A stretch of DNA of 64,000 nt from Haliotis rufescens. Its lineage: Eukaryota. The first letter of the stretch is position 1, and each line of letters starts with the position of its first letter. Positions 12,801 to 62,900 of this stretch are shown here, in pieces. The stretch covers positions 21,452,001-21,516,000 of the forward strand of contig NW_025963780.1 of assembly GCF_023055435.1 (NCBI RefSeq). The letters are read 5' to 3'. The notes under the pieces were generated by a model. It worked only from the letters and a program-made list of their open reading frames with translations, did not search any database and was not told where the DNA came from. Position numbers and translations under genes: made by a program.

Positions 12801-12839
12801 TATTTAAATGTACGTCAGCTTACTTGTGGAATTATGTGT

Positions 12840-13191
12840 ATGTTAGGTATATGTGTAAATATTGTTTTAATTTTGAGTATGTGGGCAAAATGTTGTATTT
12901 GGCGGGAAATTGTCTCCCTTGGCATGACAACATGTGTCATCACTAATGGATAAATTTGTAACAATTTACAATGTGTTATGAGATACCATAGTATCAATAT
13001 ATTCTTTATATAATCTACTTGTGATATGTATGTATTACTGATATAATGTATGGCCGTTTCTATTCTGTTGTAATTGTTTCAGGGCCAAATTTTCCATTTC
13101 TCCATTTCGTTATTTCTACGTTTATTCATCTGAATAAAACCGATCACAACCTCACAACCAGTCATGTCTTGGTGTCTAACCAGCTGTAACA
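12840..13191 (+). mobile_element. Displaced 3' portion of the Gypsy LTR (ends TGTAACA, followed by TSD GTAA)
   Basis: Highly similar to 15716-16057 of the 5' LTR; followed by gtaa and the satellite in register. Confidence 0.9.
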
Positions 13192-15075
13192 GTAAGGCCC
13201 GATGGGAGAGAAGTGAGGGAAAGTAAGACACAAGGGGAGAGCTGCAAGGAGAAGTAAGGCCCGATGGGCGGGAAGTGAGGGAAAGTAAGACACAAGGGGA
13301 GAGCGGCAAGGAGAAGTAAGGCCCGATGGGCGAGAAGTGAGGGAAAGTAAGACACAAGGGGAGAGCGGCAAGGAGAAGTAAGGCCCGATGAGAGAGAAGT
13401 GAGGGAAAGTAAGACACAAGGGGAGTACGGCAAGGAGAAGTAAGGCCCGATGGGCGAGAAGTGAGGGAAAGTAAGACACAAGGGGAGAGCGGCAAGGAGA
13501 AGTAAGGCCCGATGAGAGAGAAGTGAGGGAAAGTAAGACACAAGGGGAGAGCGGCAAGGAGAAGTAAGGCCCGATGGGCCAGAAGTGAGGGAAAGTAAGA
13601 CACAAGGGGAGAGCGGCAAGGAGAAGTAAGGCCCGATGGGCGAGAAGTGAGGGAAAGTAAGACACAAGGGGAGAGCGGCAAGGAGAAGTAAGGCCCGATG
13701 GGCGAGAAGTGAGGGAAAGTAAGACACAAGGGTAGAGCGGCAAGGAGAAGTAAGGCCCGATCGGAGAGAAGTGAGGGAAAGTAAGACACAAGGGGAGTAC
13801 GGCAAGGAGAAGTAAGGCCCGATGGGCGAGAAGTGAGGGAAAGTAAGACACAAGGGGAGAGCGGCAAGGAGAAGTAAGGCCCGATGGGAGAGAAGTGAGG
13901 GAAAGTAAGACACAAGGGGAGAGCTGCAAGGAGAAGTAAGGCCCGATGGGCGGGAAGTGAGGGAAAGTAAGACACAAGGGGAGAGCGGCAAGGAGAAGTA
14001 AGGCCCGATGGGCGAGAAGTGAGGGAAAGTAAGACACAAGGGGAGAGCGGCAAGGAGAAGTAAGGCCCGATGAGAGAGAAGTGAGGGAAAGTAAGACACA
14101 AGGGGAGTACGGCAAGGAGAAGTAAGGCCCGATGGGCGAGAAGTGAGGGAAAGTAAGACACAAGGGGAGAGCGGCAAGGAGAAGTAAGGCCCGATGAGAG
14201 AGAAGTGAGGGAAAGTAAGACACAAGGGGAGAGCGGCAAGGAGAAGTAAGGCCCGATGGGCCAGAAGTGAGGGAAAGTAAGACACAAGGGGAGAGCGGCA
14301 AGGAGAAGTAAGGCCCGATGGGCGAGAAGTGAGGGAAAGTAAGACACAAGGGGAGAGCGGCAAGGAGAAGTAAGGCCCGATGGGCGAGAAGTGAGGGAAA
14401 GTAAGACACAAGGGTAGAGCGGCAAGGAGAAGTAAGGCCCGATCGGAGAGAAGTGAGGGAAAGTAAGACACAAGGGGAGTACGGCAAGGAGAAGTAAGGC
14501 CCGATGGGCGAGAAGTGAGGGAAAGTAAGACACAAGGGGAGAGCGGCAAGGAGAAGTAAGGCCCGATGGGCGAGAAGTGAGGGAAAGTAAGACACAAGGG
14601 GAGAGCGGCAAGGAGAAGTAAGGCCCGATGGGCGAGAAGTGAGGGAAAGTAAGACACAAGGGGAGAGCGGCAAGGAGAAGTAAGGCCCGATGGGCGAGAA
14701 GTGAGGGAAAGTAAGACACAAGGGGAGAGCGGCAAGGAGAAGTAAGGCCCGATGGGCGAGAAGTGAGGGAAAGTAAGACACAAGGGGAGAGCGGCAAGGA
14801 GAAGTAAGGCCCGATGGGAGAGAATTGAGGGAAAGTCAGACACAAGGGGAGAGCGGCAAGGAGAAGTAAGGCCCGATGAAAGGGAAGTGAGGGAAAGTAA
14901 GACACAAGGGGAGAGCGGCAAGGAGAAGTGAGGGAAAGTAAGACACAAGGGGATAGCGGCAAGGAGAAGTAAGCCCCGATGGGTGAGAAGTGAGGGAAAG
15001 TAAGACACAAGGGGAGAGTGGCAAGGAGAAGTAAGGAAAAGTAAAACACATGGGGAGAGCGGCAAGGAGAAGTAA
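13192..15075. repeat. 62-bp purine-rich satellite (dimer of related 31-mers) with a 682-bp higher-order repeat
   Basis: Unit gtaaggcccgatgggcgagaagtgagggaaagtaagacacaaggggagagcggcaaggagaa; diagnostic variants recur at +682 (gctgc at 13241 and 13923). Confidence 0.97.
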
Positions 15076-16057
15076 TGTAGGCGTGACATTTTGAGGGTAT
15101 TTTAATGTCATAATTCGGTTCCTTTGTATATATCTATTTTACAATGATTGGATGTAACATGGTGTTTTATATTTTATGGTTTAAAGGTAAAATAAGAATA
15201 AAAATAATGTATAAGTCATAAAAAGGTTGTTAAAAATATTGATGGTTGGTGGCAGTATTCTAATGTTTGTGGTTTTAAGTGAATGTCAATTAGATTGACA
15301 TTTGGTTTTGTTTATCTCTTAGTTCCTATGAATTTCATTTATCTGAATGGTTATGACATCAGAGTTATGTAAAGTATAATGCTGGATCAAGGGTATTGCC
15401 TCATTTTGGATCCAGGATGAAAGTTGTTTATCACCTGACCCTAATTCTTAACTTCTCATCTGTGAATTTAAAAAACTAAGAAAGTCTTCTTTGCACCAAT
15501 CTAACCAACTCACAATCACAGCACCGCACAGGCAACAGCAAGGTGGCAGTAGGATTTAACAGGTCAGTTAAATACTTAAACACTAAATTATGTTTAGATT
15601 TATTATGTCTTTTACATGTTCATTTAGTATGTTGTTTCATAGAAATTAATGTCATTTTGTATCTTGTTAAAAATGATAAGGTTAAAAAAAGGTATTTAAG
15701 TATCTAAAGTATCTGATGTTAGGTATATGTGTAAATATTGTTTTAATTTTGAGTATGTGGGCAAAATGTTGTATTTGGCGGGAAATTGTCTCCCTTGGCA
15801 TGACAACATGTGTCATCACTAATGGATAAACTTGTAACAATTTACAATGTGTTATGAGATCAATATATTCTTTATATAAGCTACTTGTGATATGTATGTA
15901 TAACTGATATAATGTATGGCCGTTTCTATTCTGTTGTAATTGTTTCAGGGCCAAATTTTCCATTTCTCCATTTCGTCATTTCTACGTTTATTCATCTGAA
16001 TAAAACCGATCACAACCCCACAGCGAGTCATGTCTTGGCGTCTAACCAGCTGTAACA
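15076..16057 (+). repeat. Gypsy 5' LTR (982 bp)
   Basis: Starts TGTAGG and ends TAACA; matches 27999-28648 plus 12840-13191. Confidence 0.93.
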
Positions 16058-16077: not shown

Positions 16078-17333
16078 ATTATTCAGATAGGATCTTCACT
16101 TGATGGTGACTTGAAGTTGATCTGATGTTGACCGGAAGTTGATCTGATGTTGACCGGATGTTGATCTGATGGTGACCGGAAGTTGACTTGTTTACATCCT
16201 GTTATCTGCCTTGCTGTGAGTTACATGTCTTTGCCTTGTGACATCTATTTTGCCTGTTTTAATTAGCTGCTGTGATAATGCTTCTTTGCTGAACTCACCA
16301 TGAACACTGGATCTATAGATTGTTTATACAATCATGTGAACATTTTACAGCATTGAACTTTTAATGTACAGCAGGGATCCAGTGAACATTACAGATTGAC
16401 ATGGTGTATTGGACATTTACTGAATCTGTGATATTTTATATTGTCTGACTTTTATATATACTTACGTGTATCTGAACACTGTGATATTTGTGTATATACG
16501 GGTTGCGAAACAAAAATGAATTTAGTAGTTGCCCGGATTGACCTCTTATTGCCCATTTTATAGGCTCATTTTTTGCCTTTGTTATGTGTGGTATGCATAT
16601 GGTTACATTGTGACATGTGTGATTGAATGATGAATTTGGTCACTAGTACATTGTATGTAGTCCCTGTGTTGTGTTAGGTCTTAGTCAGTTATTTAGTTAC
16701 AGATAGGTACACTTTAATTACCCTTTAATTAGTATATCAAAACAAACTTGGTTTTATATTAACTAAATTACCTAAATAGTACTTAGTCAATTTAATTATT
16801 TATTCAATCTCAACTAGGTAATAATACAGTTTATGTTCAGACTACCTCAGATGAAAAGATTAACAAACAATGATGTTTTGTGGGATATAATGGGCAGAGT
16901 GTGGATGATGCAGTCGGGGGCGATAAGCAAGGTCCTACCGCGGACTAGAAATCGCATACAGACCCTATCGCGGGTCAAGTTGTCCCTCCACCGTGCTTGG
17001 CAGACAGGACCCACAGCAAAGATACTGTCACTCCCCCCGCGGAAACAGCGGGCAGAAGAATTTGGGCTCCCGCTGTAATTAGCAGGCAACCAGAGTATCA
17101 TACACCCACCAGCATGGTGTTAAACCAAATCCCCCGACTGCACCATGCCAAACAGCGGGGTGCAAAATGTATAAATACACTATGCACACCGCTGACATCC
17201 ACACATTATATTAAATTTGGATTAAATTATGATGTGGAAGGGAGATGGGGAGTGGATAAGGGACTGGGAAGGAAAAGAAAATTATGCGCCTCCCCCCAAA
17301 GTGAAGTTATACATACTTACCCGAACGGTACCT

Positions 17334-27998: not shown

Positions 27999-28648
27999 CG
28001 TAGCCGTGACATTTTGAGGGTATTTTAATGTCATAATTCGGTTCCTTTGTATATATCTATTTTACAATGGTTGGATGTAACATGGTGTTTTATATTTTAT
28101 GGTTTAAAGGTAAAATAAGAATAAAAATAATGTATAAGTCATAAAATGGTTGTAACAAATATTGATGGTTGGTGGCAGTATTCTAATGTTTGTGGTTTTA
28201 AGTGAATGTCAATTAGATTGACATTTGGTTTTGTTTATCTCTTAGTTCCTATGAATTTCATTTATCTGAATGGTTATGACATCAGAGTTATGTAAAGTAT
28301 AATGCTGGATCAAGAGTATTGCCTCATTCTGGATCCAGGATGAAAGTTGTTTATCACCTGACCCTAATTCTTAACTTCTCATTGGCTAATGTAAAAAACT
28401 AAGATAGTCTTCTTTGCACCAATCTAACCAACTCACAATCACAGCACCGCACAGGCAACAGCAAGGTGGCAGTAGGATTTAACAGGTCAGTTAAATACTT
28501 AAACACTAAATTATGTTTAGATTTATTATGTCTTTTACATGTTCATTAAGTATGTTGTTTCTTAGAAATTAATGTCATTTTGTATCTTGTTAAAAATGAT
28601 AAGGTTAAAAAAGGTATTTAATTATAAGTATCTAAAGTACCCGATGTT
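27999..28648 (+). repeat. Gypsy 3' LTR, 5' two-thirds only
   Basis: Matches 15076-15720 with scattered substitutions; stops at ATGTT. Confidence 0.92.
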
Positions 28649-28655
28649 TTGTCAA

Positions 28656-29122
28656 CGGCAAGGAGAAGTAAGGCCCGATGGGAGAGAAGTGAGGGAAAGT
28701 AAGAGACAAGGGGAGAGCGGCAAGGAGAAGTAAGGCCCGATGGGCGAGAAGTGAGGGAAAGTAAGACACAAAGGGAGAGCGGCAAGGAGAAGTAAGGCCC
28801 GATGGGCGAGAAGTGAGGGAAAGTAAGACACAAGGGGAGAGCGGCAAGGAGAAGTAAGGCCCGATGGGCGAGAAGTGAGGGAAAGTAAGAGACAAGGGGA
28901 GAGCGGCAAGGAGAAGTAAGGCCCGATGGGAGAGAAGTGTTGGAAAGTAAGACACAAGGGGAGAGCGGCAAGGAGAAGTAAGGCCCGATGAGAGAGAAGT
29001 GAGGGAAAGTAAGACACAAGGGGAGAGCGGCAAGGAGAAGTAAGGCCCGATGGGCGAGAAGTGAGGGAAAGAAAGACACAAGGGGAGAGCGGCAAGGAGA
29101 AGTAAGGCCCGATCGGAGAGAG
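28656..29122. repeat. 62-bp satellite (same family as 13192-15075)
   Basis: Same consensus unit. Confidence 0.95.
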
Positions 29123-29129
29123 CCTTTCG

Positions 29130-29832
29130 AAATTAAGACCCAAGGCGGCAGAGGCCAGGGAAAGTAAAACCCAAGGGGAGAAGGACTAGGGAAAGTAAGA
29201 CCAAAGGGGAGAAGGACTAGGGAAAGTAAAACCCAAGGGGAGAAGGAGTAGGGAAAGTAAGACCCAAGGGGAGAAGGACTAGGGAAAGTAAGACCAAAGG
29301 GGAGAAGGACTAGGGAAAGTAAGACCCAAGGGGAGAAGGAGTAGGGAAAGTAAGACCCAAGGGGAGAAGGACTAGGGAAAGTAAGACTCAAGGGGAGAAG
29401 GACAAGGGAAAGTAAGACCAAAGGGGAGAAGGACTAGGGAAAGTAAGACCCAAGGGGAGAAGGAGTAGGGAAAGTAAGACCCAAGGGGAGAAGGACTAGG
29501 GAAAGTAAGACCCAAGGGGAGAAGGACTAGGGAAAGTAAGACCCAAGGGGAGAAGGAGTAGGGAAAGTAAGACCCAAGGGGAGAAGGACTAGGGAAAGTA
29601 AGACTCAAGGGGAGAAGGACAAGGGAAAGTAAAACCCAAGGGGAGAAGGACAAGGGAAAGTAAAACCCAAGGGGAGAAGGACTAGGGAAAGTAAAACCCA
29701 AGGGGAGAAGGACAAGGGAAAGTAAAACCCAAGGGGAGAAGGAGTAGGGAAAGTAAAACCCAAGGGGAGAAGGACTAGGGAAAGTAAGACCCAAGGGGAG
29801 AAGGACTAGGGAAAGTAAGACCCAAGGGGAGA
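29130..29832. repeat. 31-bp satellite monomer array
   Basis: Unit aagtaagacccaaggggagaaggactaggga. Confidence 0.95.
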
Positions 29833-30399
29833 AAATAAGTGGCACCAATAGCAGACATCCAATTGCAGCAATGGAGGGGAACAAAACAGTACTAATTGTC
29901 AAAAGGCTGAACAGTTTCAAAAAGTTACTTCAGACACTGTATGTGGATGTATTCAGACAACAAACAAACATTTGAAAATAATTGTCTTACTCCTTACTTG
30001 TGATGAATTAAAGCAGGCAATATCCAATTAAAAATACATCTCACCTCTGTAATGAAATTTTAGACATATGCCATCCTCTGGTGGTTGGTTACCTGCCAAC
30101 GTCTGAATGTTGGTCTTCAGGAACATAACAAAATCCATGGAAACATGTGTTGGTTATTCCTGTCCCCAGACTTCATACAGACAGATACTTATAACATCTA
30201 CCTGTGGAAATTCATGGACAAAATAGTCATATGCCGGCTGAAACTTCTTGAAAGCAGTATGTTCTAAAACACAACCAGGTGTTAAGAAAAGACGATAGAA
30301 TAGAACAACAAGTATGTTTGCAATCTGAAGTACTTTGAAATACATTGGCAGTCAGGAACGTATGTTAAGTGTATTCCTTTACATTGAAAGGCGTAACAT

Positions 30400-47900: not shown

Positions 47901-50900
47901 TTTACGAGACATAAATTCCCCATGCTAGCAAATCAACAAAAAGTGTCAGTTTTCGATATGAGGTAAGTAGGGTCAAACGGATGGGGTTGCACTGAGACCT
48001 CGGGGTGAAACCTAGACATGATCGCCTCGTAACATTAATTGCACTATGCAATATATTCATATCTGCTCCTGGTATCAATAGAGAAATACAATAACAGGAA
48101 GGCGAATTTCAACATCTACCGTTAAAAAGCCTGTAAGCAAGCCGTCCCGTGAAGGGTATGATCCTAACAGTTTACCACCCGCGGCAAAGATTTGGGTGGA
48201 CTAGGCAACACCAGGGACGGGCTTTGTGGCCTTTCACCATGTTTCACGGTTTTACCTCCGATTCATAAATGACAGTAAACCTTTTGGCGACGTAGGTAGC
48301 GGCGAGCGGTGTGTAAGGTTGACAATTCTTGACCATGATCGCTATGGGGGCGGTGTCATGGTGTGTGGTGGTATCACACATGATAGACAAACTTATTCAG
48401 TTATTGTGAAAGGGCATTTGACAGTCCAGCGGTATGTTGACAAAAATTTTCGTCCTTTCTTTGTTCCTTTCGTCGGAATTATCGGTGGACATTTTGAAGT
48501 GCAAGATGGCAATGCCAGACTACATAATGCCTAGGTCATCACCGATGATCCCAACTAGAAAACATACGGCCATTGCACTGGCATGGTACGACCCTTAACA
48601 TGACCCCAACAGAGCATGTGTGACAAGTTCTTGGGCGGAGAGGGGCGGTCGGGTAGCCTGGTGGTTAAAGCGTTAGCTCGTCACGCCGAAGACCCGGGTT
48701 CGATTCCTGACATGGGTACAATGTGTGAAGGCCATTTCTGGTGTCCCCCGCCGTGATATTGCTGGAATATTGCTAAAGCGGCGTAAAACCATACTCACTC
48801 ACTCACTCACTCACTCACTCACTCACTCACTCACTCTTGGGCGGAGAGTGTGCGCCAGGGACCCAGCACCCGCCACCACCCACCCAGCTTGGGGTAGCTC
48901 TTTTGTCGGAATGGCGGACAATACCAAGGGCAATCATGCGCATGTTATTAAACGGAATGCCAGCAAGGTGTCGTGCATGTATCACCCAACATTGAGGACA
49001 CAACAGATATTGATCTACAGGCCCCAATTTATCGATTGCTATTACACATTAACTATTATTTTATCAATTCCCTTAGTTTTTGTCTATGTCATTTAGTTGC
49101 AAATATATAATGATTTATAATGCAAGCTCATATTGGTTTAGTTTGCATTCTCAGCTCGTGTTGGAGTATCCACGAACATGGCGACGAAAGGTACTTTCAA
49201 GTCATATTTCTGTTCATAGGTGAAGGACCTTATGGTTATTAATGGGACATCAGCATGTAAGTTAATTAATGTAGTTGGGTTTTGATTTTAGTAAATCACA
49301 GGGAGTTTTTTATTTGACGAATGGTTGAAAATGAAGTTCTCGAAACCGTTCCAGTGACTGATAGCTAGGGTGTTTCATTTTACAATGTTTTCAAATCGAG
49401 TTTTTTAACTAATGTTTTCAAATCGAGTTTTTTTACTAATTAAGTAATGTCAGACCATTTACTCTGACACGATGACTCTCTGCGTGCAAAGCTGACCACA
49501 CCTCCACAGGAATATGAATCTTCTGATCAGCCAATTAGGTTTCTAAATTCGCGGTCCAATTGAGCAAACAAGCATGTCTGACTTCTGTAATTTGAAACCG
49601 AAGTTTAAACGCTCAAGTCCAAATGTAAATAATTCATGCCGCGCTTGTATATCGTTATGAATAGTCCATAACCCTGTCGTTTCTGAGCTCCATGTCACCT
49701 CCACCCAGTTGCGAGGAATATTTGGTTTTGATGTTGGTTTTCCTTCTGTAAAACTCGAAATTCCGATTCAAGATGGTAAATAAGTCTGAGCAGAATTGTT
49801 TTAGAAAGCTGACGTCCGATTATCTCAACAACCTGGCCATCTTTCATCTTTTGTAAAAACATTTTACAGTCACTTCACATAATTCTTTACCAGTCGCGAT
49901 GACGTCTCCCTTCGTGTTGGTGCAAGACCATGCCACATAACCCAGCAGTGTCACTCAGAACAACTGCGCTTTTGTATACATGAGAACAACACAATTTGTT
50001 CAACATTTGTTCATTGTTTATCAGATTTTGGACCAGTGAACGTGAATGTTGAAAAGTTGACTGACACGACGGCCAATGTGTCGTGGACACACGCCCCCAG
50101 CTGCCATGACCGCACATTTATATCGGTCACATATCAGCTCGATTCAGGCAAGCCAGAGACGATCAAACTGTACAAAGGTAAGAACTCCTAGAGGATCCGG
50201 ATCAAAAACTAAACTGTGTGTGGGTGTGTGGGGGGTGTGTGTGTGTGTGGTAGGGGGGGGGGGGGGGGGGGGGGGGGTGGTCACGGGTGGCCCAGTCGTC
50301 TAAGCCGCCGCGATTCGCTGTGCAGAGTTGCGTCCCTTGGGCACGCCAGAAACCTATGGTTGTGGGTTCGAATCCCGGTTCAACCCAATTATGTTTCTAG
50401 CTTTCTACCCGTGCTCGTGGGTTTCACCGAAGTGGTAAACGTCGGAGACCTGCATCACTTCGGGCTTTCCTCCCACATTAAGCTGAAACGCCGTGATATA
50501 ACTGGAATACTGTTAAAAGCGGCGTTACACCCAATTTACTCACTCACTCACTCACTAAACTGTGGAAGGGATGTGTGAAGAAAGCTTATTTTAGAGGTTT
50601 CCATGAAGCGTGTTTTGACCAAAGCTGATCATATTCAAAGGAGACGTACATAAAACAGTGCAAAGATATCTTTGGTCACAGACTTAATATATTCACACAA
50701 AATCATTTGAAATTCTAACAATCCGCCTCTTTCACTCATTTTGTCTATCTTTGTATATTTGACCATGTCAGACGTTCAAAACTTGCACGCGTAAGAACGA
50801 AAGAAAGGTAGTCGCCAGTCATTTGAACGCGTCTTGTAACTGTCATATCAATGTGTCAATTTAAAGTATTCATGAGGGCCAACAATATCCGCATTCTACC

Positions 50901-53900
50901 TTCCCCTCCTTTCATCTTGCATTTCTATAAAGTCCCCTTGCGATGATATATGATTGGATTTCTTCAGAACCACCAATTATGTCATCAATAATAAATCGCA
51001 ATTTGATCAAAGGTTCATCTATGTTCTGACAATTTATGCTTGTAACTATGTCAGTAAATATTGCTTGAAGTCGCATTTAGAAGTATTGCAGCAAATTGCA
51101 GGTGACAATTACGTTGCCAGTTTTGAAACTACATGTATCAACATGACTTATCATGTAGGAATTTTACATGTGTAAATTGATGTTGCAATGTACAAACTAT
51201 ATATTGGCCTTCGTACAAATGAACTTTGACCTTGACTTTGAATTCTTCAAAGACGCTACATTCCAACTCCTCAAGGGCCTTGAACCTGGCAAAAAGTACA
51301 AGGTCATGGTCACAGCAGACTATGGGGACATCAAGAGTAAACCTAGAAATGCCTCTTTTACAATGGGTAAGTCAAATGTTGTGCATGTCAGTTATATTTG
51401 ACATAAAGTTATATATTGCTTTACAAATTACACACTTTTGGATATCATATTAATTATTCAAATAACTTCTTTACTAATTATCTTCACAGCTTTTTCAGGG
51501 GACACCTCAGGTTTAGGTGCTGGAGACATAGCGGGTATGGTTGTAGGTAGGTGTAATGTTTTTCATTCATTAGAAGTCTAAGTCCCTAGGAATATCGAAT
51601 ATCAGTTCATCCGTTTTGTCGATATTAATATTGTGACGAGTAGAATTATGCCAGGACTATAAAGTAAAAAAAAGAAGTCTAAATGATATGTCGAGTCAAA
51701 AGATTTCGAGTTTACGAGGTTAACCTGCATCCTGTTAGTTGTTTTAAGAAATTACATTTAGTACTAACTACTAAATGACTTTATCGCGCGTATCAAAACC
51801 ATTGGCTAATTACGTCCGTAACACAATCACCCCTCGTAACTCAATCACCCCCGGTCACCACTCTGCACCGTGCCAGGGGAATATTCCCGCGCGAGCATCA
51901 TCCCGCCTTTTGTTAGTCCATCATTCGCGGACATTCCTTCTTCAAGTACACACGCGTTCACTGTATCTAATCGCTTTCGCTTTGTACGTTTCCTTTGTAC
52001 CCAGTCGCGACCGTTTTGCCGATTACGCTTTGAATACCATCTATTCAAACACTCGCCAAATCGCATTTACACAATCGCGACCGTTTCGTCGATTACGCTT
52101 TGAATACCACCTATTTCAGCACTCGCCGTATCGCATTTATTCCGTTCTACTCCCGAACTTCATCCTCGGGACATTTTTACACTTGTGGAGTACCAACTAA
52201 CCACCTCGACCTTTCGTGATGCCTCCCAAGAGAAGAGCAGCCGTCAACCACAAGCTTGTGAGGGGAGCCAAGCAGGCCAGGACAACCAGAAGACAAACCT
52301 CGGGAGTACACATTATGCAGGAGGCAACAGCTGATGGTGAGTCTTCCAATTACGGAAATATCCAAGGTGGCAACAGAATTAACGTGCAATCGGCGCAGCT
52401 TGTAAATGCCGCGCAGGCTGCCAACTCGGCTACCCAGGTAAACGAGCAACTGGAAAAAATACTCCAGTTGCTGGAACATTCAGCGCCCAGCCCGGTTAGC
52501 GCAAACCAACAGGTAAGGCTTGGTTTTAGTTCTCACGCCATTTCGCCCAACATAGGGAGAATCCCCGATGCGCACAACGAGGCCGACGGTGACGCGGCTT
52601 GGCCAGCCAATCAGAACGCAGGATACGGGGATTCCCTATCCTTCCGTGCGGATGGAATAGACGCGCACGTCAAACAACAGGTGAGGGAAAAATTCTGGCG
52701 TGGCGAGTTTGTCGACCTCGGCACAATCCTACCAAACACCTAGGGAAGTCACAAGGACGGTACGATTACCATGGCGTACGACTCCTCAGGTAAGATAATT
52801 TTTAAACCAATAAAGCAGCAACCAAAGCGCCTGTACCTGGCAAGCTGGACTTCAGCTTTCCACATTTTCATGTATATCTATGTTAGTAGGCACTCCGAGG
52901 TCCGCACAACCCAGGGGTTGCTGTCCTACATGGAAACCATAAGAACGGCGGCTCTTCGATTCGGGTGGGAAGCCTGGTCAATCTACGACCAACAATTCCG
53001 ACACAGAATGTCAAGGGACCCCTCACGACGCTGGGACAACATTGACGGGGAGTTGTGGCTGAAGTACATGGTCACACAGCCGGTACGACAACCAGAATCA
53101 GGCGGACGGGGCGCAATGACACGCGTACAGGGGGACATCGCTAGTCAGGTATGCTGGGATTTCAATAAACTTGGTTGTAGCAGGGTCAACTGCAAGTACA
53201 CTCACAAATGCGGTAAGTGTGGCAAACATTCCCACAGCTCTAGGACCTGCTTTCGATGGGAATGGGGTCCAACCGACCCCATACAAGCCCAATCAGCCTT
53301 TCCCTAACAGAAAACCAGCCGTCAAGGCAGGTAATTTCAATGGCCCCTTCCCCCGTGGATCTCAATGAAATAGCACCCTGGTTACGCCAATATGCTAGGG
53401 TCAATTACAGAGATGCAAATTATTTATGGGTAGGTTTTAGCTTTGGCTTTAAGCTCGAGTTCCAGGGCAGCTGCATGGGTCGCCTGGCACGAAACTTGCG
53501 ATCAGCCACGCACCAAGACACGGCATGCTACGTGAAACAAAAACTACAAAAGGAAGTCGACCTTGGCGGGATGGTGGGCCCCTTCAAGGACACCCCCCTG
53601 GACAACCTCCAAGTATCCCCAATAGGCCTGGTGCCCAAGAAGCAGCCAGGCTATGGTCAGCATCTGGGTAAGCATGCGGAGGAATTCCGTCTAATTCACC
53701 ATCTATCCTATCCCAGGGGTAAATCTATAAATGACTTCATAGACACAGAGGCCTGCTCCGTTGTGTATGCCAGATTTGATGAAGCTACGCATATGGTTCA
53801 ACAACTGGGAAAGGAAGCACTACTAGCAAAATTCGACATTCAGTCGGCCTTTAGAATTATACCAGTCCACCCATCCGATTTCGAGCTACTAGGCATCAGA

Positions 53901-56900
53901 TTCGAAGGTGAGTTCTATTTCGATAAATGCTTACCATTTGGCTGCTCCATATCTTGCGTCATATTTGAAACGTTTAGTACCTTCTTGCAATGGTGCATGC
54001 AATTACATCTTCCAACGTGTCAGATCATGCATTACCTGGATGACTTCCTAACTGGGGGCACAGCAGGCACCAGCTACTGCTCAGACAACCTCAACGGATG
54101 CGTGAATACACTGGAACAGCTTGGGGTCCCTATTGGGCACGACAAGACGGTGGGCCCCACGACCAAACTGACATTCTTAGGGCTGGAAATCGACACCAAT
54201 GCAATGCAGATCAGAATCCCAGAGTCGAAGATCAAGGAGGCGACAAGGGAAATCCAAGACATCCTGTCAACAGGTAACATCAAGGTCACAAAAAGGGCCC
54301 TTCAGTCCCTCATAGGCAAGCTTAACTTTATGTGCAGGGCTATACCAATGGCAAGGGCATTCAGCCGAAGGCTAATCGATCTGCTTAGCAAAGGTAAGCA
54401 ACCATTTCACCATTAGGATTACCAGCTGGGTCAAGGAAGACCTACAAATGTGGTTAACATTTCTTACGAGTTATAACGGCATTTCAGTGTTTCAGGACCA
54501 ACTATGGGTAGACAGCGATTTCCTCCAGCTGTTTTCAGACGCAGCGGGTGGTGCCAGCTTTGGGGCCTACATGCAGGGCAAATGGTTTAACGGCGCATGG
54601 CCAACCCAGTGGGTGACGGATGGAACTACATGGGACTTGACGCTCCTGGAGCTGTTCCCCATCACACTGGCAATCCAACTTTGGGGCAAGCAACTCGCAA
54701 ACAAAAAGGTCCTCTTTTACTGCGACAACCAAGCCGTCTTAGCAATAATCAACAAACAGTCGACCAAGGCCCCCAGAGTGATGAGCCTACTCCGTCGCCT
54801 AATCCTGCAGTGCCTCCGATATAATATTATGTTTAAGGCAAAGTATGTATGTTCCACTGCTAACACTATTGCCGATGCTCTCTCGAGGTTTCAGCTCAAA
54901 TGCTTCCGAGAGGGAGCACCAGCCGCGGACCATAACCCCACACCTATCCTGTGCAACATATGGCGGATCTGAGGCAGGAAGCCGGCAGACTCCTTCAACA
55001 ATCTCTGTCTACAAATACATGGACCACTTACCAAACAGGCATCAATGCCTTGCACCAGTTCCGGTCCACACACCAGCTACAAGAGGTGTGGCCAGTCCGG
55101 CTGGATCAGGTCGTAAACTTTATTGCTTATCTGTCAGTCACTCACCACTCCCCTAACACAGTCAAGACTTACATTCACACCACAAATTCCACGGGCTCAC
55201 CGACTGTACAAACCATTTCCTGGCAGGCAAGATTTTAACAGGCCTACACAAATCAGCGGGCCGACCAGACACCAGAAAACCGATCACTGCAGAACTGCTG
55301 CAGGTAGTAACCAACAATCTGCCTCACGTATGCTCATCAGCATATGAAGCCAGACTGTTCAAGGCAGTCTACTGCACAGCCTTCTTCGGCTTCTTTAGGG
55401 TTAGCGAACTGGTCCAAACTGGACCCTCAAAAACAGGTTGCGCCATCCAGAATTTAAGCTTCTTGGGCAACCCCCAGCAGCTTTCAATCCATTTACCACA
55501 CTCAAAGTCTGATCAGTACAGGATGGGGATAACAGTTACAATGTCATCGATACCAGGTAATCCGCTATGTCCGGTAGTCACCATCAAGCACTCCTTCCGC
55601 ATTGGGGCAGCCACATCAGCAGCCATGAACGGGGTGCCCGAACACCTCATACAACAATACGGCAGGTGGAAATCAGATTGCTACAATGCTCACATACGCT
55701 TACCAACAAATTCAATGTTACACAATTAATTCAAATAGTCTTTCATGGTACTTACTACACTTCTTATTGTTTACAGTTTCGATGGTGGGATCCAGCTACA
55801 TGGCCAGGGCACGGCAGTACTTGCTCCTGAAGGGCACCAGTCCAAACCAACCGAGGATGCTATGGCTGGCACGAGGGGGGATGATGTGGAAGGAGCTGGA
55901 CACCATTCTGGATGCACAGGTCAAGGCGACACGGCGCACCCCTAGAGCCCTAATCATTCACCGGGGCTCCAACGACCTGTGCTCGGTCAAGGGCAGCCAA
56001 CTCTACCTTGACATGGTGGCATCAATCCTTAGGATACAACTCCAGCTTCCTGGCACCAGGATCATTGTATCCTCAATTCTGCCCAGGCGCTACTGGCACG
56101 ATGCCAGGGATCCACTAAAGATCGAGGGGATGCGGAAGAATATCAACCGCTGACTGGCCAACCGAGACAAAGAGCTCGGCGGTACAATGGTGCCACATCC
56201 CCAGATCCTGGCATCAGACAAGACATGGCACCACAGTGACAAAGGATTGTGTGTGTTTACGGACAATTTATTGCATGCCCTGGCGCTTGTTTTGTGCCAG
56301 TAAGGATGTTATCTCCACAGGTTAGTTAGTGTTTCTTTTCAGTACATAGGCAAGCGGGACAAAAATGCTATCTCCACGTATCGCGTGGCCGTGGGTGTGG
56401 GGTAGCACTCTGGTGCTTTGTGGCGGGGTTCTTGTGGGCTACACTGCTAGTGACGAATTAACTTGCTTCCAAATTAATACTCGTGCTTAAGGCTACCTGC
56501 TTTTCAGGGGGAACCTTGTCTTCCCCGACTTTTCCTGCCGGGGAATCGTAAAATAACATACGTTGGGGCAAACAATTGCCACGTATATGGGCCTGGCGGC
56601 GGAAGTCGTCTTGTCAAGCGCTAGCTGACAGTTGGGTCCGCGGCGGTAGTCGCACAATGGTTTTTCTAATGGGGCCAGGCAGTGGAATCGCCGTTGGCCA
56701 CGCTAGTGGCCATTGCAACGGTAGCATTTTGGTATACACAATTAGCAGCTTAGTAGCCCACTAGTACCTGCACACCCTCGGCCTTAAAACCCAATCTCAT
56801 CTTCTGTTTTTATTATAGGCACGGGCATCCACGGCTCGGTGGCCCGTGCCTCTCCTTGGCATATCGTGGGATAATTACATTAAGTACTAACTACTAAATG

Positions 56901-59900
56901 ACTTTATCGCGCGTATCCAAACCATTGGCTAATTACATCCGTAACCCAATCACCCCTCGTAACCCAATCACCCCTCGTAACTCAATCACCCCCGGTCACC
57001 ACTCTGCACCGTGCCAGGGGAATATTCCCGCGCGAGCATCATCCCGCCTTTTGTTAGTCCATCATTCCCTGACAGTCCTTCTTCAAGTACACACGCGTTC
57101 ACTGTATCTAATCGCTTTCCCACCCACCCACGCAGCTTCCCACTCCTTTTCTTTCCTTTTCAGCCTGATGTGTCCTCTTCACCTGGAATGCTAATCACTT
57201 CTTTTCTTCAGCGTTTATTCAATTACAGGTACCAGCAGAGCAGATTGTATATATGTAAATAACCTGTACATATGTAAAATAGGTTTTCAGGGCGCTTGTA
57301 TATATGTACATACCTTTTAAACGATTCTGATATATGTTAAAAAACATGACTTATAAATAGCTGTATATATGTATATATGCGAATACCTGTCTCAACAATA
57401 AACTATGTCGAGGTGTGCGGGGTTCTTGTGGGCTACACTGCTAGTAACGAATTAACTTGCTTCCAAATTAATACTCGTGCTTAAGGCTACCTGCTTTTCA
57501 GCTGGAACCTTTCCGGGGTTACCTGCTTCTCAGTGGGAACCTTGTCTTTCCCGACATTTCAGCCGGGGAATCGTAAAATAACATACGTTGGGGCAAACAA
57601 TTGCCACGTATATGGGCCCGGCGGCGGAAGTCGTCTTGTCAAGCGCTAGATGACAGTTGGGTCCGCGGCGGTAGTCGCACAATGGTTTTGCTAATGGGGC
57701 CAGGCAGTGGGATCTGCTTTGGTCTACTACCTGGGGCCGGGCAGCGGTAGTCTGACTTAGGCCAGCAGTGGGGAGCTGCTTTTGGCAGCGTGGGAGTTGC
57801 CAAGCAATGGTAGGGTTTGAATATGCTACCGTGGGGGCCGGACAGCGGTAGCAGTCTCAGGCCAGCAGCGCTAACTGCGAATCGCCGTTGGCCACGCTAG
57901 TGGCCATTGCAACGGTAGCATTTTGGTATACACAATTAGCAGCTTAGTAGCCCACTGGTACCTGCACCCTCGACCATTTAACCCAATCTCATCTTCTGTT
58001 TTTATTATAGGCACAGGCATCCACGGCTCGGTGGCCTGTGCCTCTCCTTGGCATATCGTGGGATAACTATGTATTATGTTATTTCTATAATATCACAATC
58101 ACGTGGGGATTCCGGATTAGAATGGGATGAGTGAGTAAGTGAGCATGGTTTTCGCCGGTTTTAGCAGTATTCCAGCAAGATATAGGCTTCACACATTGTA
58201 CTCTTGTGGGGAATAAAACCCAGGTCTTCAGCGTGACGAGCGAACGCTTTAACCACTAGGCTACCCAATCGCCCCGGATTAGAATTGGTCCTCTGCAGCC
58301 TGTTGTAAGAGGCGAATAAATAAATCCCTTTTACTGAAATTCCAAAGACACCTTCCTTCAAAGAAAGCCAGACGACTCTTGCAGAAATGTTTTTGGATCA
58401 GAATAAATACCAAGGCCTTAGTAAGCTTTCCCTTGTTGGTATGGTAGACATGTGGAGGACATTTCCAGCTATGACGCATCAATGAATGCACCGTGAATAT
58501 TGGAATATTGCTGACTTCGGCGTTCAACAAAACAATTATGATAGCACTATAAAACTATAATAGGATACTGTAATTATTGCTTTAAAATATCAACACCTCA
58601 AACATGTACGAACCTTGATCATTTTTCTTTTCTTACCATTGGTGATATTAATCCTAGCTGTCCTTGTCATTGGCCTGTTTATGTGGAGGACGGGCAAGAT
58701 GGTGGCGTTGATCAATCGACGTCAGAGCAGACACAAAGGACGTCAGAATCCCAACACTCAGAAAATCTACAATAACCTTCAGAGACCTCGGAAGGGCACA
58801 GTGTCCTATCATGTAGGTTTCTTCAGTCACAGGCATGGACGTTAGACAAACGAATGTTTCACAGGGAGAGTTTGTAAGGTTTAACGCTGTTTGGAAAGTA
58901 TCTCGTACTTACGTTATATCACGTCCAAGATTATTGCACTTATATAGCACGTGCATGCACGTGTGTGTGTGTACGTGTGTGGCTGCTTGTACTAGTCCGG
59001 ACTGATGCCAATTTATAGTGCTAGCACACTGAGATACCATGCTGCAGTTTAACATGAATACCCCACTCAGACACAGTATACTGACTCCGAGCCGACCAGT
59101 CCTTGTTTTAGCCCCTTAGTGCCGAGCGCCAGACAGGGTAACAACAAGTACCATCTTTTAACGTTTTTTGGTATGACGCGGCCGGCCGGGATCGAACCCC
59201 GGACCTTCCGCTCTACCACTAGACCACCACGGAGGCGGTCTCACGTGACTGCTAAATACTGGAAAAGGTGATGTACGTCCCAGACGTTTACCCAAAACAC
59301 GGACATGCTGCTGACAAAATTAGAATAAAAGACAGGCAAATCTGGGATTCGAACCTATGGCCAGCAGTAAAACGACTCATGACAGGATGTGGTTAATTCT
59401 AATAGGGAATGTGATTGTAACATTTACAAGTATATAAACCATGACATGAAAGAGCCAAACAGCGGCTGTTTGTCTGGCAGCCATAATCATAGATAATGTA
59501 TCATTATACTCCGACGTGGGACGTTGTTTATTATGTCAATCGCTGGTTTGTCTGGTCCAGACCCAAACAAAGGCTAAACTCGCTTTGTAAAAGAAGGCTG
59601 TGGTCTTAAAACATGGATCCTCGATAGCGAGATGTAACATTCAAATAAGCAATATACTAGCTGAATACAAAAACGGGAACGAACTGCACGTATGTCACCT
59701 ATATTCCATTCATTATGTGTACTATTATGTGTACTATTTATTATGTGTACTGTTATGTGTACTATTTATTATGTGTACTTTAACATTGATGTGTACTATA
59801 TGGTGTACTATTATGTTTACTATTCATTATGTGTACTATTATGTGTACTATTTTTATGTGTACTATCATGTGTATTATTTATTATGTGTACTTTAAATTT

Positions 59901-62900
59901 ATGTGTACTATTATGTGTACTGTTATGTTACTATTTAGGAAGTGTACTTTATGTGTACTATTATGTGTACTATTATGTGTACTATTTAGGAAGTGTGCTA
60001 TTTATTATGTGTACTATTACGTGTACTATTTATTGTGTGTACTATTATGTTTACTATTATGTGTGATATTATTTAACATCGGCAAGTGAAATTTGTTTCT
60101 TACTCAATTTGTGACTACATGTTTATTTTCTCTTCAGAACAAAACATATGAAGTTGACGACGACATCTATGTGTACGGCAGCATGTCGTTCACGGCGGAG
60201 CAGCCTTGGTATATCCCCAAGGACAATCTGACGTTGATGGAGGAGATTCACACTGGCAGATTTGCACGGATTTACAAGGCGTCTCACAAGACTGGCAAAA
60301 CATCGAGCGAGATGGCAGCCAAAGTGTTGAAAAGTGAGACATGCAAACACTGTCTGGATGGTTGTTCAGATAAAGGATTTTGGTGGTTGTGCAGTTGGAC
60401 TGTTGTTGTTCTTCTTATTTGTTTCTTGTTCTTTTGTTTGTTGTTGTTTTTTAGAGGTTTCTATGGGGCCGTCGTGAACAACAAGAAACTGGAGGTTTCA
60501 TCTCGGTAGCCCTGGGTGTTTGCGTTTGAGTTTCGCCTTTTAGTCGTGCCAGGATCCACTGACCATGGGTCTAAACTGTTCTAAATCTAATTCTTGCTTT
60601 TTAACTCCATTCGCCTGCCTTTCACCAAAACTGTAGATATTTGAGACCTGAGCGAAACGTAAATCATTTGCTTTTTGATCATCACTATAGTGCAACGCCA
60701 ATGCTCAAGGGCTGTTCATTTTCGATTTTTTGTGATTGTAAGAAAAGGGACACGGAACAAAACAGAAGAGAAGATACAATTGTACACCCACGAAGCCTCG
60801 TTAAGTTACACTGATAACATCGATTGTGCAGCCAGTGAGCATGTCGGAGGCTGCTGTCGTGAAGGTCACTATCACCATAGCCTTAGAACCCGTACCACGA
60901 CATAGCAGGACCATTTGAGACATGAAATAGGCTTGTGACAGGCTCCTAGCGATGAATCATTAGACACACATTTTTATCACAGAAACACCAGATGAAGAAA
61001 ACAGTTTACTGATGATGGCCAAAATCAACTTTGCTGCAACACAGGTCGGGGAACATCGCAACGTTCTGGGATTTCGGGGCGCTATTCTCAACAACGATGC
61101 TCGTAAGTGAAAACGTAAACGACTAACACCTCTCCATAAGTACCAACGGTAACATGGAATATATACTGGTAAAACCAACTGAGGGATCAACAGCATATTA
61201 CAACCTGATCGCCCTGATTGTTTCTAGGCGATAGTACACTTTTGGGTGTAGATGGCAAAAAAAGAAATGGGCGGAACAGGCCCATTAACTTCGTTTTCAA
61301 GATAGAAAAATTGGAAATGATGGCCTGATCATGCTTCCTTTATTTATAATCGTCGAAATTGGTTGGCGTGAAAGTTAACGTGACGTGACATCCTTTCTGC
61401 GACCAATGCAGAGAAGTGTGTATCGGAGTGAAATATTTGATTGTAATTAGATTGTAGCTTTATTCTCTTCCAGTGGGACCTGTGCTGGTGTTAGAGTACT
61501 GCGAGAACGGACAAATGGACAAATGGCTGAGAGACCACAGAGACAATGTCAACGTGGACACCTTGGAGAGGATTCAGAGCTTTGGATTGGGTATTGCCAG
61601 AGGAATGGAATACCTGGCCATTAAAGGGATATGTCACGGCGCGTGCTGATCTCCTGAATAAGCTTGCTAAATGTGCAATTTGTATCATGATCGTAGGTTT
61701 CCATTTTGAACGTCCAAGGCCTGAATCCCTTCCACAAGCTGAGCCTTGATATAATCGAGAAGTTGAAATCGTGTTGAAATCTGCATTAAAGCCCCATTGT
61801 GATATGTCTGGTCTCTCCTAGCGCCATCAACCCTCCGAATGATTGAGTCTGGCCAATGTTAACAAGGGTAGCTGACTATAAATTGTCAACCCGAAAGCGA
61901 AACGATAAGATGGCGCGTACCTTCCTCACCATTCGCAGCTGCCCTTAACCTACAAGAAGACCCCTACCGATCAATGTAATCTGCGAAAACCAAGCCGAAT
62001 ACCTTAATCATAGGTATTTATATGTACAAACGCAAGAAAAGTGTGCATCTTAAGTGACAGTCACAATTGTTTCACGATACTGAATAACACGTGGATGTAA
62101 AACGTTTTAAATAAATACATGTAAAGATACGTGTACGTGTAGTACAACAGGTTGACCTCTACTTTTTGAAATGCCTGTTTGCGTGGAGACCGGCTCAAAA
62201 TGAAAAATATTTGCCACGTGAGGGTCCACGTAAGAGGGTCCGTTTTATGTTCATGATCACGAATCATGGCGAGTGTCGTTTATTAAGAGTTGCTGAGCTA
62301 TTTAAACAATTCATGTATAACAATATAATCTTAATTGTATTTTTTTCGGGGTGGGGGTGGGGGTGGGGGGTGGGGGGGGGGGGGGGGGGGGTGGGTCTTT
62401 TGCTTTTACACACTGAAAGAAATATTACAGAGCTTTATCACGACATCCTTGAAATAATATTGGCCAAACAAAGCAGTGGTTGATTGCAAAAACATCACCC
62501 CTCGCCGTCTGGCTTAGATACAAGCAGCCAAGTCAGAGAGCTTGACCACCCGATCCTCGTCTCTGCTATTCTGGCCTGAAATCTCCACAGATTAACAAGC
62601 TAGTTGTGTCACAATCATATGTATTTCAATAAGAATGCGAAATATTGATGCCATACGTCTATAACAGGATACAACTTTAACTGTCTAAATTAAAACATTT
62701 TTAGGATCGAATCCCTGTGAAGTGGACGGCTCCATAGTGTCTTCAGTCTCTGAAGGTAGCCAACGAGAAGAGTGACATCTGGTCCTTTGGCATCACTATG
62801 TGGGAGATCTTCAGCATGGGTAGGTTTCTAAATCTGAAAATGCCCTTCTCGTCTTTTCAAAAGTTTTGTTTCTTGTAATGATTTGTTTGTTGACACCGCA

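What the first reader, a model, noticed from the sequence alone, without database searches (positions are those of the whole stretch)
56423..58066. The B repeats of Ngaro copy 2 look like a large, closed, multi-branched structured RNA/ssDNA domain
Seen: the B repeat begins at the 5' arm of a long-range stem. GTGGGCTAC pairs perfectly with GTAGCCCAC (56434-56442 with 56753-56761 in B1; 57428-57436 with 57947-57955 in B2). The stem extends with G-U pairs on both sides (gcggggt/acctgc, ctgctagt/attagcag). Inside are serial hairpins: ttccccg..cggggaa, atacgt.ggcaa..ttgcc.acgtat, ggcggc-GGAA-gtcgtc (GNRA tetraloop), tgtca..tgaca, gcggc-GGTA-gtcgc and ccgttg.gccac-GCTA-gtggc..caacgg. The many G-U-compatible pairs favour folding of the sense strand as RNA. 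Established: Ngaro/DIRS elements have no tRNA primer-binding site and their priming and circularisation mechanism is poorly understood. Inference: this is a cis-acting RNA module for RT binding, self-priming, template switching or packaging, or possibly a ribozyme. I know of no description of it.
Basis: partly seen in the sequence, partly recalled or inferred. Interest (0 to 1): 0.85.

Follow-up and report, generated by a model that had tools for sequence, protein, structure and literature searches.

The report
Conserved folded RNA domain in Ngaro repeats
The non-coding "B" repeat of an abalone Ngaro retrotransposon is a hairpin-rich domain closed by a long-range stem, and six diverged families in this genome keep the fold through compensating base changes, so it is probably a working RNA part of a poorly understood class of mobile DNA.

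Summary
The exact domain folds better than all shuffles (B1 z -4.65, B2 z -3.85).

The stronger evidence is comparative. Six Ngaro families, with hydrolase identity of 45-94% and including "copy 1" of this window, share one architecture:
- a 14-33 bp closing helix;
- two conserved module hairpins and a GGCAAC-type hairpin;
- a conserved linker;
- a subterminal hairpin whose sequence differs between families.

Compensatory changes exceed both the shuffled and the slid controls. In the consensus helices there are 35 G-U cells and no A-C cells, which points to the sense strand, most simply RNA.

A new point is that AATAAA lies 11-14 nt before B2 in all four families where B2 was seen. It is the only such signal downstream of the ORFs. 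The genomic RNA therefore probably carries only B1, as a 3'UTR domain.

What the domain does is unresolved. Packaging or RT recruitment is my preferred reading. There is no Rfam match, so no known ribozyme, and almost no small RNAs map here. I found no description in the open literature.

The parts
51750..51978 (+). A1 repeat (5' terminal repeat of the element). It begins with the palindrome CATTTAGT-N7-ACTAAATG at 51755-51777, whose last three bases are the ATG of the first ORF.
   Evidence: Direct repeat with 56873-57119. Palindrome read. ORF 51775..52200.
53256..56153 (+). Degenerate coding region: reverse transcriptase, RNase H-like segment, tyrosine recombinase ([13 protein letters not shown]) and SGNH hydrolase ORF (55686-56153).
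   Evidence: Pfam RVT_1 E 7e-15. Translations. Hydrolase homologues carry PF13472.
56404..56417 (+). Small hairpin AGCAC-TCTG-GTGCT just upstream of B1. It is not part of the repeat and is kept in four families.
   Evidence: Sequences upstream of B1 in W, L037, L046 and L047.
56423..56877 (+). B1 repeat, a short form with private deletions of 32 nt and about 166 nt.
56423..56771 (+). Closed multi-hairpin domain of B1. 5' arm 56423-56452 and 3' arm 56742-56771. Inside are module hairpin M1 (56491-56515), M2 (56521-56545), the GGCAA hairpin with outer stem (56558-56586) and further hairpins.
   Evidence: MFE and z-score. Consensus fold and pair counts across families.
56772..56817 (+). Conserved linker (CACACCCTCGGCC.. 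type) followed by a pyrimidine-rich tract.
   Evidence: Fuzzy motif hits in W, L033, L037, L043, L045/46. Alignments.
56818..56850 (+). Subterminal hairpin of B1 (GGCACGGGC..GCCCGTGCC), about 27 nt before the B|A junction.
   Evidence: 78 genomic copies. Same position with unrelated sequence in other families.
56873..57119 (+). A2 repeat.
57120..57416 (+). Unique AT-rich spacer X between A2 and B2. It ends with AATAAA at 57397-57402, 14 nt before B2.
   Evidence: No other copy in the window. This is the only + strand AWTAAA between 53164 and 58212. Conserved in 7/7 B2 contexts of the family and in three other families.
57417..58069 (+). B2 repeat (long form, typical of the family). Closed domain 57417-57965, 5' arm 57417-57446, 3' arm 57936-57965.
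58010..58042 (+). Subterminal hairpin of B2. It carries an A-T pair where B1 and 74 other copies have G-C.
16899..17204 (-). Homologous closed domain of the distant Ngaro 'copy 1', just downstream of its hydrolase.
   Evidence: z -5.45, 0/100 shuffles. Shares the CCUGCU..AGCGGG hairpin and the CCACAC.. linker.

Best explanation
The B repeat is a cis-acting structured domain of the element's sense-strand RNA. A long-range helix closes off an expandable array of short hairpins. It is followed by a conserved single-stranded linker and a subterminal hairpin.

A conserved AATAAA sits 11-14 nt before B2. The genomic RNA therefore most likely ends where B2 begins and contains only B1, as a 3'UTR domain about 0.4-0.55 kb upstream of the poly(A) site. 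B2 would then be a DNA copy regenerated from B1 at each cycle. This matches the usual reading of split direct repeats as one intact and one split LTR-like unit, B-A.

Shown here:
- the fold;
- its conservation with compensatory changes;
- the bias to the sense strand;
- the position of the poly(A) signal.

Inferred:
- The domain is a recognition platform for the element's own proteins, either Gag-like packaging or recruitment of RT.
- The closing helix insulates the variable hairpin array and brings the 5' boundary of B next to the B|A junction.
- The GU-rich 5' arm doubles as the downstream element of the poly(A) site in B2.
For: 1. Energy. The exact domains beat all shuffles in W, L037 (z -7.5), L046 (z -9.3) and copy 1 (z -5.45).

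2. Conservation. The closing helix is present in W, L037, L046, L047, L048 and copy 1, with 14-33 pairs.

3. Pair counts on 14 sequences:
- 84% of cells paired;
- 7 of 16 pairs with changes on both sides, against 4.4 +/- 1.0 in shuffles (2/500);
- covariation score 0.228 against 0.132 (0/500), with slid controls at most 0.111.

4. Independent consensus fold. RNAalifold on three short families recovers the closing helix and the inner hairpins. That structure gives 94.6% paired cells and 8 pairs with double changes against 3.3 +/- 1.2 (0/500), with slid controls at most 2.

5. Strand. Cells in the consensus helices are 263 Watson-Crick, 35 G-U, 0 A-C and 17 other. At position 15 of the closing helix, A-U, G-U and G-C are all seen.

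6. Subterminal hairpin. It keeps its position with unrelated sequences in five families, and three of them carry one U-G each.

7. Poly(A) signal. AATAAA lies just before B2 in 4/4 families and 7/7 family copies. It never precedes B1, and it is the only such signal after the ORFs.

8. Shared internal deletions remove whole hairpins or their distal parts and leave the frame intact.
Against: - No direct evidence that B is transcribed or folded in vivo. The runs that hold it are only guessed to be RNA, and they are contigs.
- Both strands, and DNA parameters, give significant z-scores.
- A strand-blind count of wobble sites in single-sequence folds is only mildly asymmetric: 17 G-U to 4 A-C on the plus fold, against 12 to 8 on the minus fold.
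- Within the young W family, variation looks neutral: 33 G-U events against 28 A-C events.
- RNAalifold accepts G-U but not A-C, which biases which columns enter the consensus helices.
- All families come from one genome.
- Function is not tested at all.
- The poly(A) site is inferred from a hexamer, not mapped.
Confidence: 0.6

Rival explanations
1. The fold works at the DNA level. Either single-stranded cDNA (shown for DIRS-1) or extruded palindromes in duplex DNA would serve the tyrosine recombinase, end joining or second-strand synthesis, in the manner of folded integron attC sites.
For: - DNA-parameter folds are significant on both strands.
- DIRS-1 cDNA is mainly linear and single-stranded (PMC7192593).
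- The subterminal hairpin lies about 27 nt from the B|A junction, where recombination is expected.
- A sequence-conserved palindrome, CATTTAGT-N7-ACTAAATG, starts A.
Against: - First-strand cDNA is antisense. The 35 G-U cells of the sense strand would be A-C mismatches there, and no A-C cells occur on the sense strand.
- Arms 300-550 nt apart do not look like a recombinase core site.
- The subterminal hairpin has spacers of 3-6 nt, and the element ends do not map inside it.
Confidence: 0.17
2. The B domain is the initiation site for reverse transcription, by self-priming or primer-independent entry of RT, or it guides the template jump that rebuilds B2.
For: - Priming in DIRS and Ngaro elements is unknown, and a 3' hairpin was proposed as a self-primer for DIRS-1.
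- B must be copied twice if only B1 is in the RNA.
- The last bases before B2 can pair with the linker next to the 3' arm (GTCGAGG/CCTCGAC in the window, GCGGAT/ATCCGC in L046).
Against: - The subterminal hairpin of B1 is about 540 nt from the probable RNA end.
- Snap-back priming from the RNA end onto the 3' arm would give an inverted copy of B, not the direct copy seen (my reasoning).
- I found no credible tRNA-type primer site by eye.
Confidence: 0.12
3. The structure has no function of its own. On this view it is a GC-rich, hairpin-forming minisatellite that hitch-hikes in a non-coding repeat, or a trigger or substrate for host small-RNA silencing.
For: - The interior is plastic. There are duplications, deletions, a 103-nt tandem repeat in L037 and (GCT)n runs in F47 and F48.
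- Sliding windows are not extreme.
- Within-family variation is neutral.
Against: - The frame is kept between families with 45-55% hydrolase identity through double substitutions.
- A small-RNA library of the same species label gave only 11 laid reads out of 21.6 million read.
Confidence: 0.07
4. The domain is, or contains, a self-cleaving ribozyme.
For: Other retroelements carry ribozymes in their repeats, for example Penelope-like elements, retrozymes and R2 (from my own knowledge). The domain is a closed multi-helix junction.
Against: No hit to any of the 4227 Rfam models at E up to 0.5-1 in any of the five families scanned (W, F37, F46, F47, F48) or in copy 1. The interior varies in helix number, which is unlike a catalytic core.
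Confidence: 0.03

Closest known systems
Retroviral packaging regions closed by a long-range interaction (FIV, MPMV, HIV-1 U5-AUG)
   Same: A long-range helix closes a set of short stem-loops in a non-coding part of the genomic RNA. Hairpin number and sequence vary while the frame is kept. The titles seen (PMC2987497, PMC12150112) describe such domains.
   Different: Those lie in the 5' leader or gag and are bound by nucleocapsid. Here the domain is in the 3'UTR of a tyrosine-recombinase retrotransposon, and no protein binding is shown.
DIRS-1 internal complementary region and proposed 3' self-priming hairpin
   Same: It belongs to the same order of elements. It is a non-coding repeat needed to rebuild missing termini. 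The transcript lacks nearly all of the right terminal repeat, as inferred here for B2 (PMC7192593).
   Different: The ICR works through complementarity to the termini, not through a closed multi-hairpin fold. The DIRS-1 hairpin sits at the RNA 3' end, whereas the Ngaro hairpin does not.
3'UTR stem-loops of stringent-type LINEs and the R2 3'UTR, recognised by their RT
   Same: A structured 3'UTR element of a retroelement RNA that could recruit its own RT (PMC5135761 abstract).
   Different: Those lie directly at the 3' end, next to the tail where priming occurs. B1 is 0.4-0.55 kb upstream of the AATAAA.
U3 region of LTR retrotransposons
   Same: If B-A is read as a permuted LTR, B is the part present once, near the 3' end of the RNA, and duplicated during DNA synthesis. 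This is my inference. 'Isolated AB repeats reminiscent of solo LTRs' are reported in PMC8547959.
   Different: U3 is known as a promoter region, not as a conserved RNA fold. In the integrated Ngaro no B lies upstream of A1.
Integron attC sites (folded single-stranded recombination sites of a tyrosine recombinase)
   Same: An imperfect palindrome whose structure, not sequence, is conserved, in an element that uses a tyrosine recombinase (from my own knowledge).
   Different: attC sites are 60-140 nt single hairpins and fold on one DNA strand. Here the domain is 300-550 nt and the wobble pattern favours the sense strand, most simply RNA.

Membership tests
Ngaro (tyrosine-recombinase retrotransposon with split direct repeats) | Reverse transcriptase / RNase H coding region | tested here: met
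   Pfam RVT_1 E 7.1e-15, plus a weak RT_RNaseH match.
Ngaro (tyrosine-recombinase retrotransposon with split direct repeats) | Tyrosine recombinase downstream of RT | tested here: met
   Translation shows [30 protein letters not shown], the H-x-x-R ... Y box, in a frame-shifted copy. No Pfam hit was obtained for the fragments.
Ngaro (tyrosine-recombinase retrotransposon with split direct repeats) | A1-[ORFs]-B1-A2-B2 repeat order | tested here: met
   A1 51750-51978 matches A2 56873-57119. B1 56423-56877 matches B2 57417-58069. The same B-A-B spacing occurs in other copies.
Ngaro (tyrosine-recombinase retrotransposon with split direct repeats) | Optional SGNH hydrolase ORF after the recombinase | tested here: met
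   ORF 55686-56153 is 88-93% identical to Haliotis rufescens proteins carrying PF13472.
Any described RNA family (Rfam 15: hammerhead, HDV-like, twister, histone stem-loop, tRNA-like and others) | Match to the family covariance model | tested here: not met
   No match inside B at E up to 1 (window 51000-59000) or up to 0.5 (L037, L046, L047, L048 and copy 1). The only hits were a weak snoRNA-like match in spacer X and a tRNA-like match in a flank of L046.
Retroviral-type packaging signal | Long-range helix closing several stem-loops in the genomic RNA | tested here: met
Retroviral-type packaging signal | Location in the 5' leader; binding by Gag/nucleocapsid; needed for encapsidation | not testable with these tools
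   The location is the 3'UTR, not the 5' leader. Binding and encapsidation need experiments.
LINE-type 3' end recognition stem-loop / DIRS-1 self-priming 3' hairpin | Hairpin at the very 3' end of the transcript | tested here: not met
   The only AATAAA after the ORFs is at 57397-57402, 520 nt beyond the end of B1 and 14 nt before B2. The RNA end itself was not mapped.
Small-RNA precursor (miRNA-like or hairpin siRNA locus) | Abundant small RNAs from the hairpin arms | tested here: not met
   11 reads laid out of 21.6 million read from one size-fractionated small-RNA run, with none stacked on B hairpins. This is one library only.
Folded single-stranded DNA recombination site (attC-like) | Structure conserved on the recombined DNA strand | tested here: inconclusive
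   DNA folds are significant on both strands. The wobble pattern favours the sense strand, which is not the first cDNA strand.

The most novel reading that the evidence does not exclude
The B domain is the missing initiation and transfer platform of tyrosine-recombinase retrotransposons. RT would be recruited to this 3'UTR fold. The closing helix would place the 5' boundary of B beside the B|A junction, so that B is copied twice and the X|B2 joint (the RNA 3' end joined to the start of B) is made. This would explain how split direct repeats are rebuilt without a tRNA primer.
Probability: 0.15. Interest if true: 0.85.

Novelty: new variant of a known kind. Interest (0 to 1): 0.62.

Why it matters
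The cis-acting requirements for replication of DIRS and Ngaro elements are largely unknown. The primer is unknown, and so is the way the terminal repeats are rebuilt (PMC7192593). A conserved, covarying RNA domain in the B repeat gives concrete, mutable targets. A conserved poly(A) signal that excludes B2 from the RNA adds a definite transcript model, which can be tested by RNA-end mapping and chemical probing. The result also shows that the repeats of these elements carry selected structure, not just redundancy. That point matters for how such repeats are annotated and aligned in mollusc genomes.

Tried and rejected
1. I first took 15707-16057 and 12830-13191 for the B repeats of copy 1 and found no excess folding (z -0.30 and +0.56). 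That was the wrong object, a neighbouring satellite and LTR-like block. The true copy-1 domain, 16899-17204 on the minus strand, folds at z -5.45.

2. A within-family test on 27 W copies compared shared with singleton substitutions. It was uninformative because the copies are young and decay neutrally: 33 G-U against 28 A-C events, with paired columns 2.2% variable against 2.9% for unpaired.

3. Sliding 300-nt z-scores do not single out B.

4. A strand-blind wobble count on single-sequence folds is only weakly asymmetric.

5. Sequencing runs. The holders are contigs of runs only guessed to be RNA, so they show no strand and no ends. The small-RNA run is nearly empty.

All comparative evidence comes from one genome.

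7. Literature. The open-access papers I searched for Ngaro with 'hairpin' or 'split direct repeats', and those I read in part, do not describe a fold in the B repeat. One search was too unspecific to use. The original Ngaro paper is not held.

8. A tRNA primer site in the B tail (TGGCATATCGCGGGAT) was rejected by eye, because no register fits a tRNA 3' end with C61 and N-CCA.

9. The histone stem-loop resembles the module hairpin (..CU-UUUC-AG..). I rejected it because there is no Rfam match and the loop varies (TTAC, CATC, CTTC).

10. The A-T pair in the subterminal hairpin of B2 is unique among 78 copies: 74 G-C, 3 G-T, 0 A-C. It is a double CpG transition, so it is suggestive but not proof of selection.


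Full report
WHAT IS THERE

The window holds a degenerate Ngaro element on the + strand. Its layout is A1 51750-51978, then frame-shifted ORFs, then B1 56423-56877, A2 56873-57119, a unique AT-rich spacer X 57120-57416, and B2 57417-58069. The ORFs encode a reverse transcriptase (Pfam RVT_1), a tyrosine recombinase box and an SGNH hydrolase.

The contig lengths of the window's genome equal those recorded for three Haliotis rufescens proteins that match the hydrolase at 88-93%. The host is therefore red abalone.

THE OBSERVATION

The exact closed domain beats all 100 dinucleotide shuffles:
- B1 + strand z -4.65, - strand z -5.61.
- B2 z -3.85 (+) and -4.45 (-).
- B1 core with DNA parameters z -3.53 (+) and -4.77 (-).

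Thermodynamics therefore confirm a non-random fold but cannot choose a strand or choose between RNA and DNA. Arbitrary 300-nt windows over B are unremarkable (z -0.65 to -2.0). In this copy the excess stability is thus largely the closing helix, about -38 kcal/mol as a duplex.

Two details need correcting. Only GGAA is a GNRA loop. B1 of this copy is also a privately deleted form: the genome holds at least 79 matches, most of them the roughly 653-nt form of B2 at 92-95% identity.

COMPARATIVE EVIDENCE

Copies of the same family are too young to help. Their differences look like neutral decay, with 33 G-U-making against 28 A-C-making events.

I therefore used the hydrolase to find diverged Ngaro families in the same genome and fetched the DNA downstream of it. 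Five families have a B repeat built the same way:
- W, the window's family (hydrolase 87-94% identical to P0001);
- F37 (52-55%);
- F46 (about 49-50%);
- F47 (about 49-50%);
- F48 (45-47%).

The shared parts are a 14-33 bp closing helix, an AT-rich hairpin, one to three module hairpins of the type GGYUACCYGCU-NNNC-AGCRGGAACC, a second module, GGCAAC-NNAA-GUUGCC-type hairpins, a conserved linker (CACACCCUCGGCCAUUU.. type), a pyrimidine-rich tract, a subterminal hairpin and a short tail ending ..AUAAU. The larger families fold even further below shuffles: L037 z -7.5 and L046 z -9.3.

I had first folded the wrong repeats, which belong to a neighbouring satellite and LTR-like block (z about 0). 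The real domain lies just downstream of copy 1's hydrolase, at 17204-16899 on the minus strand. It folds at z -5.45. It contains the CCUGCU..AGCGGG hairpin and the CCACAC.. linker. Copy 1 is therefore a sixth, much more distant family, with RT DNA only 65-69% identical.

COVARIATION

RNAalifold on three short families (A3) independently predicts the closing helix and the inner hairpins. Counted on that alignment:
- 94.6% of cells pair;
- 8 of 45 pairs change on both sides, against 3.3 +/- 1.2 in shuffles (0/500 reach the observed value);
- versions with the 3' partner slid by 1-3 columns give at most 2.

For the 16 core pairs of the closing helix on 14 sequences from six families (A4):
- 84% of cells pair;
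- 7 pairs change on both sides, against 4.4 +/- 1.0 (2/500);
- the covariation score is 0.228 against 0.132 (0/500), with slid controls at most 0.111.

Examples: G-C becomes A-U at position 12 in F46. A-U becomes G-U and then G-C at position 15 within F46. G-C becomes A-U at position 1 in F47. A U-U mismatch of W is G-C in F46 and U-A in F47 and F48.

MAFFT put copy 1's 3' arm about two columns out of register. In its own fold GCAGUCGGGGG pairs with CCCCCGACUGC. By my hand alignment this differs from W by several further double changes.

The subterminal hairpin keeps its place while its sequence is unrelated between families. Stems of 11-14 bp occur in W, F37, F46 and F48, and a two-tier stem in F47.

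These counts rest on few independent lineages, all from one genome. The A3 structure was also derived from the alignment it was scored on.

WHICH STRAND

In the consensus helices of A3 the cells are 263 Watson-Crick, 35 G-U, 0 A-C and 17 other mismatches. Under strand-symmetric mutation, transitions from a Watson-Crick pair give G-U and A-C equally often. The absence of A-C therefore points to selection on the sense strand, most simply as RNA.

Three things temper this conclusion:
- RNAalifold favours G-U columns.
- A strand-blind count on single-sequence folds is weaker: 17 to 4 on the plus fold, 12 to 8 on the minus fold.
- For one pair of the subterminal hairpin, the 78 otherwise identical copies of the 33-nt hairpin in the genome read 74 G-C, 3 G-T, 1 A-T and 0 A-C. 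The A-T is the window's B2, already noted in s1-811242.

WHERE B SITS IN THE RNA

In all four families for which B2 was in hand, AATAAA lies 11-14 nt before the first base of B2. The surrounding sequence is otherwise unalignable. In the W family 7 of 7 B2 contexts have it and none of the B1 contexts do. In the window it is the only AWTAAA on the + strand between 53164 and 58212.

The 5' arm of B that follows is GU-rich, as a downstream element of a poly(A) site would be (my reading).

The simplest inference is that the genomic RNA ends at the start of B2 and contains only B1. This is as reported for DIRS-1, whose transcript lacks almost the whole right terminal repeat (PMC7192593). B would then be the "U3-like" part of a permuted LTR-like unit B-A, copied twice during DNA synthesis. 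The X|B2 joint would be the place where the RNA 3' end meets the start of B. This last step is inference.

WHAT IT DOES

I commit to a cis-acting sense-RNA domain in the 3'UTR that the element's own proteins recognise, for packaging or for recruiting RT. The closing helix would insulate an evolvable hairpin array. The interior is clearly plastic. Hairpin modules are duplicated or deleted, sometimes in several copies at once, while the frame is kept.

Against the other roles:
- A ribozyme has no support from Rfam.
- Small-RNA production has no support. One small-RNA run laid 11 reads out of 21.6 million read.
- Self-priming by the subterminal hairpin does not fit a poly(A) site 520 nt further on.
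- Snap-back priming from the RNA end onto the 3' arm would give an inverted B, not the direct B that is seen.
- A DNA-level role remains possible, as single-stranded cDNA or as recombinase substrate, but the wobble pattern disfavours it.

LIMITS

There is no direct proof of transcription, ends or folding. The motifs quoted are from individual natural copies.

NOVELTY

The open-access papers found by the Ngaro searches, and those read in part, describe the split direct repeats only as repeats. None mentions a conserved fold, and the original description is not held. I rate this as a new variant of a known kind, namely a structured cis-element of a retroelement RNA.

Noticed in passing
window 57397-57402; L037, L046, L047, L054 (oriented copies, just upstream of B2): AATAAA lies 11-14 nt before the first base of B2 in four diverged Ngaro families and in 7/7 B2 contexts of the window's family. 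The boundary of the B repeat therefore coincides with a probable poly(A) site.
   Followed up: partly
window 51755-51777 (A1) and 56878-56900 (A2); same place in L037, L046, L047: A starts, 3-5 nt after the B|A junction, with a sequence-conserved palindrome CATTTAGT-N7-ACTAAATG. Its last three bases are the ATG of the first ORF. It looks like a recombinase core site (8-bp inverted arms, 7-nt spacer).
   Followed up: partly
G000:C79:23463368-23467555 (L021-L024): Behind one hydrolase ORF, the B repeat with its A-X spacer is repeated at least four times head to tail with a period of 1178 nt. The element therefore has extra repeat units, arising from unequal recombination or from multimeric DNA intermediates.
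   Followed up: no
window 56800-56819 and 57992-58011: A pyrimidine tract ending ..TTTTTATTATAG lies just before the subterminal hairpin. It resembles both a 3' splice site and a TATA-like box about 60-75 nt before A. F37 and F46 also have a pyrimidine tract ending in AG there. F47 does not.
   Followed up: no
window 12830-16057 and 28000-29835: A 31/62-nt satellite (13067-15075 and 28656-29835) is flanked by repeats 12830-13191/15707-16057 and 15077-15720/28000-28648. I first mistook these for the repeats of Ngaro copy 1.
   Followed up: partly
L047, L054, L048, L049, L057 (interior of B): (GCT)n / (CTG)n microsatellite runs of 12-45 nt sit inside the closed domain of families F47 and F48, at the place where W and F46 have arrays of GGCAGC/GCUGCC-type hairpins.
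   Followed up: no
window 50230-50278 and 62348-62396: Two long G runs with GT repeats lie 12.1 kb apart on the same strand, on either side of the element.
   Followed up: no
window 58200-58285: Just downstream of B2 there is a stretch that reads like the 3' half of a tRNA-derived SINE (..GCGAACGCTTTAACCACTAGGCTACCCAATCGCCCC..). A tRNA-like Rfam hit also lies in a flank of L046.
   Followed up: no
L037 (oriented 861-1172 and 1926-2237): The interior of the F37 B repeat contains a 103-nt tandem repeat (three units, 90-95% alike), each unit itself folding into hairpins.
   Followed up: no
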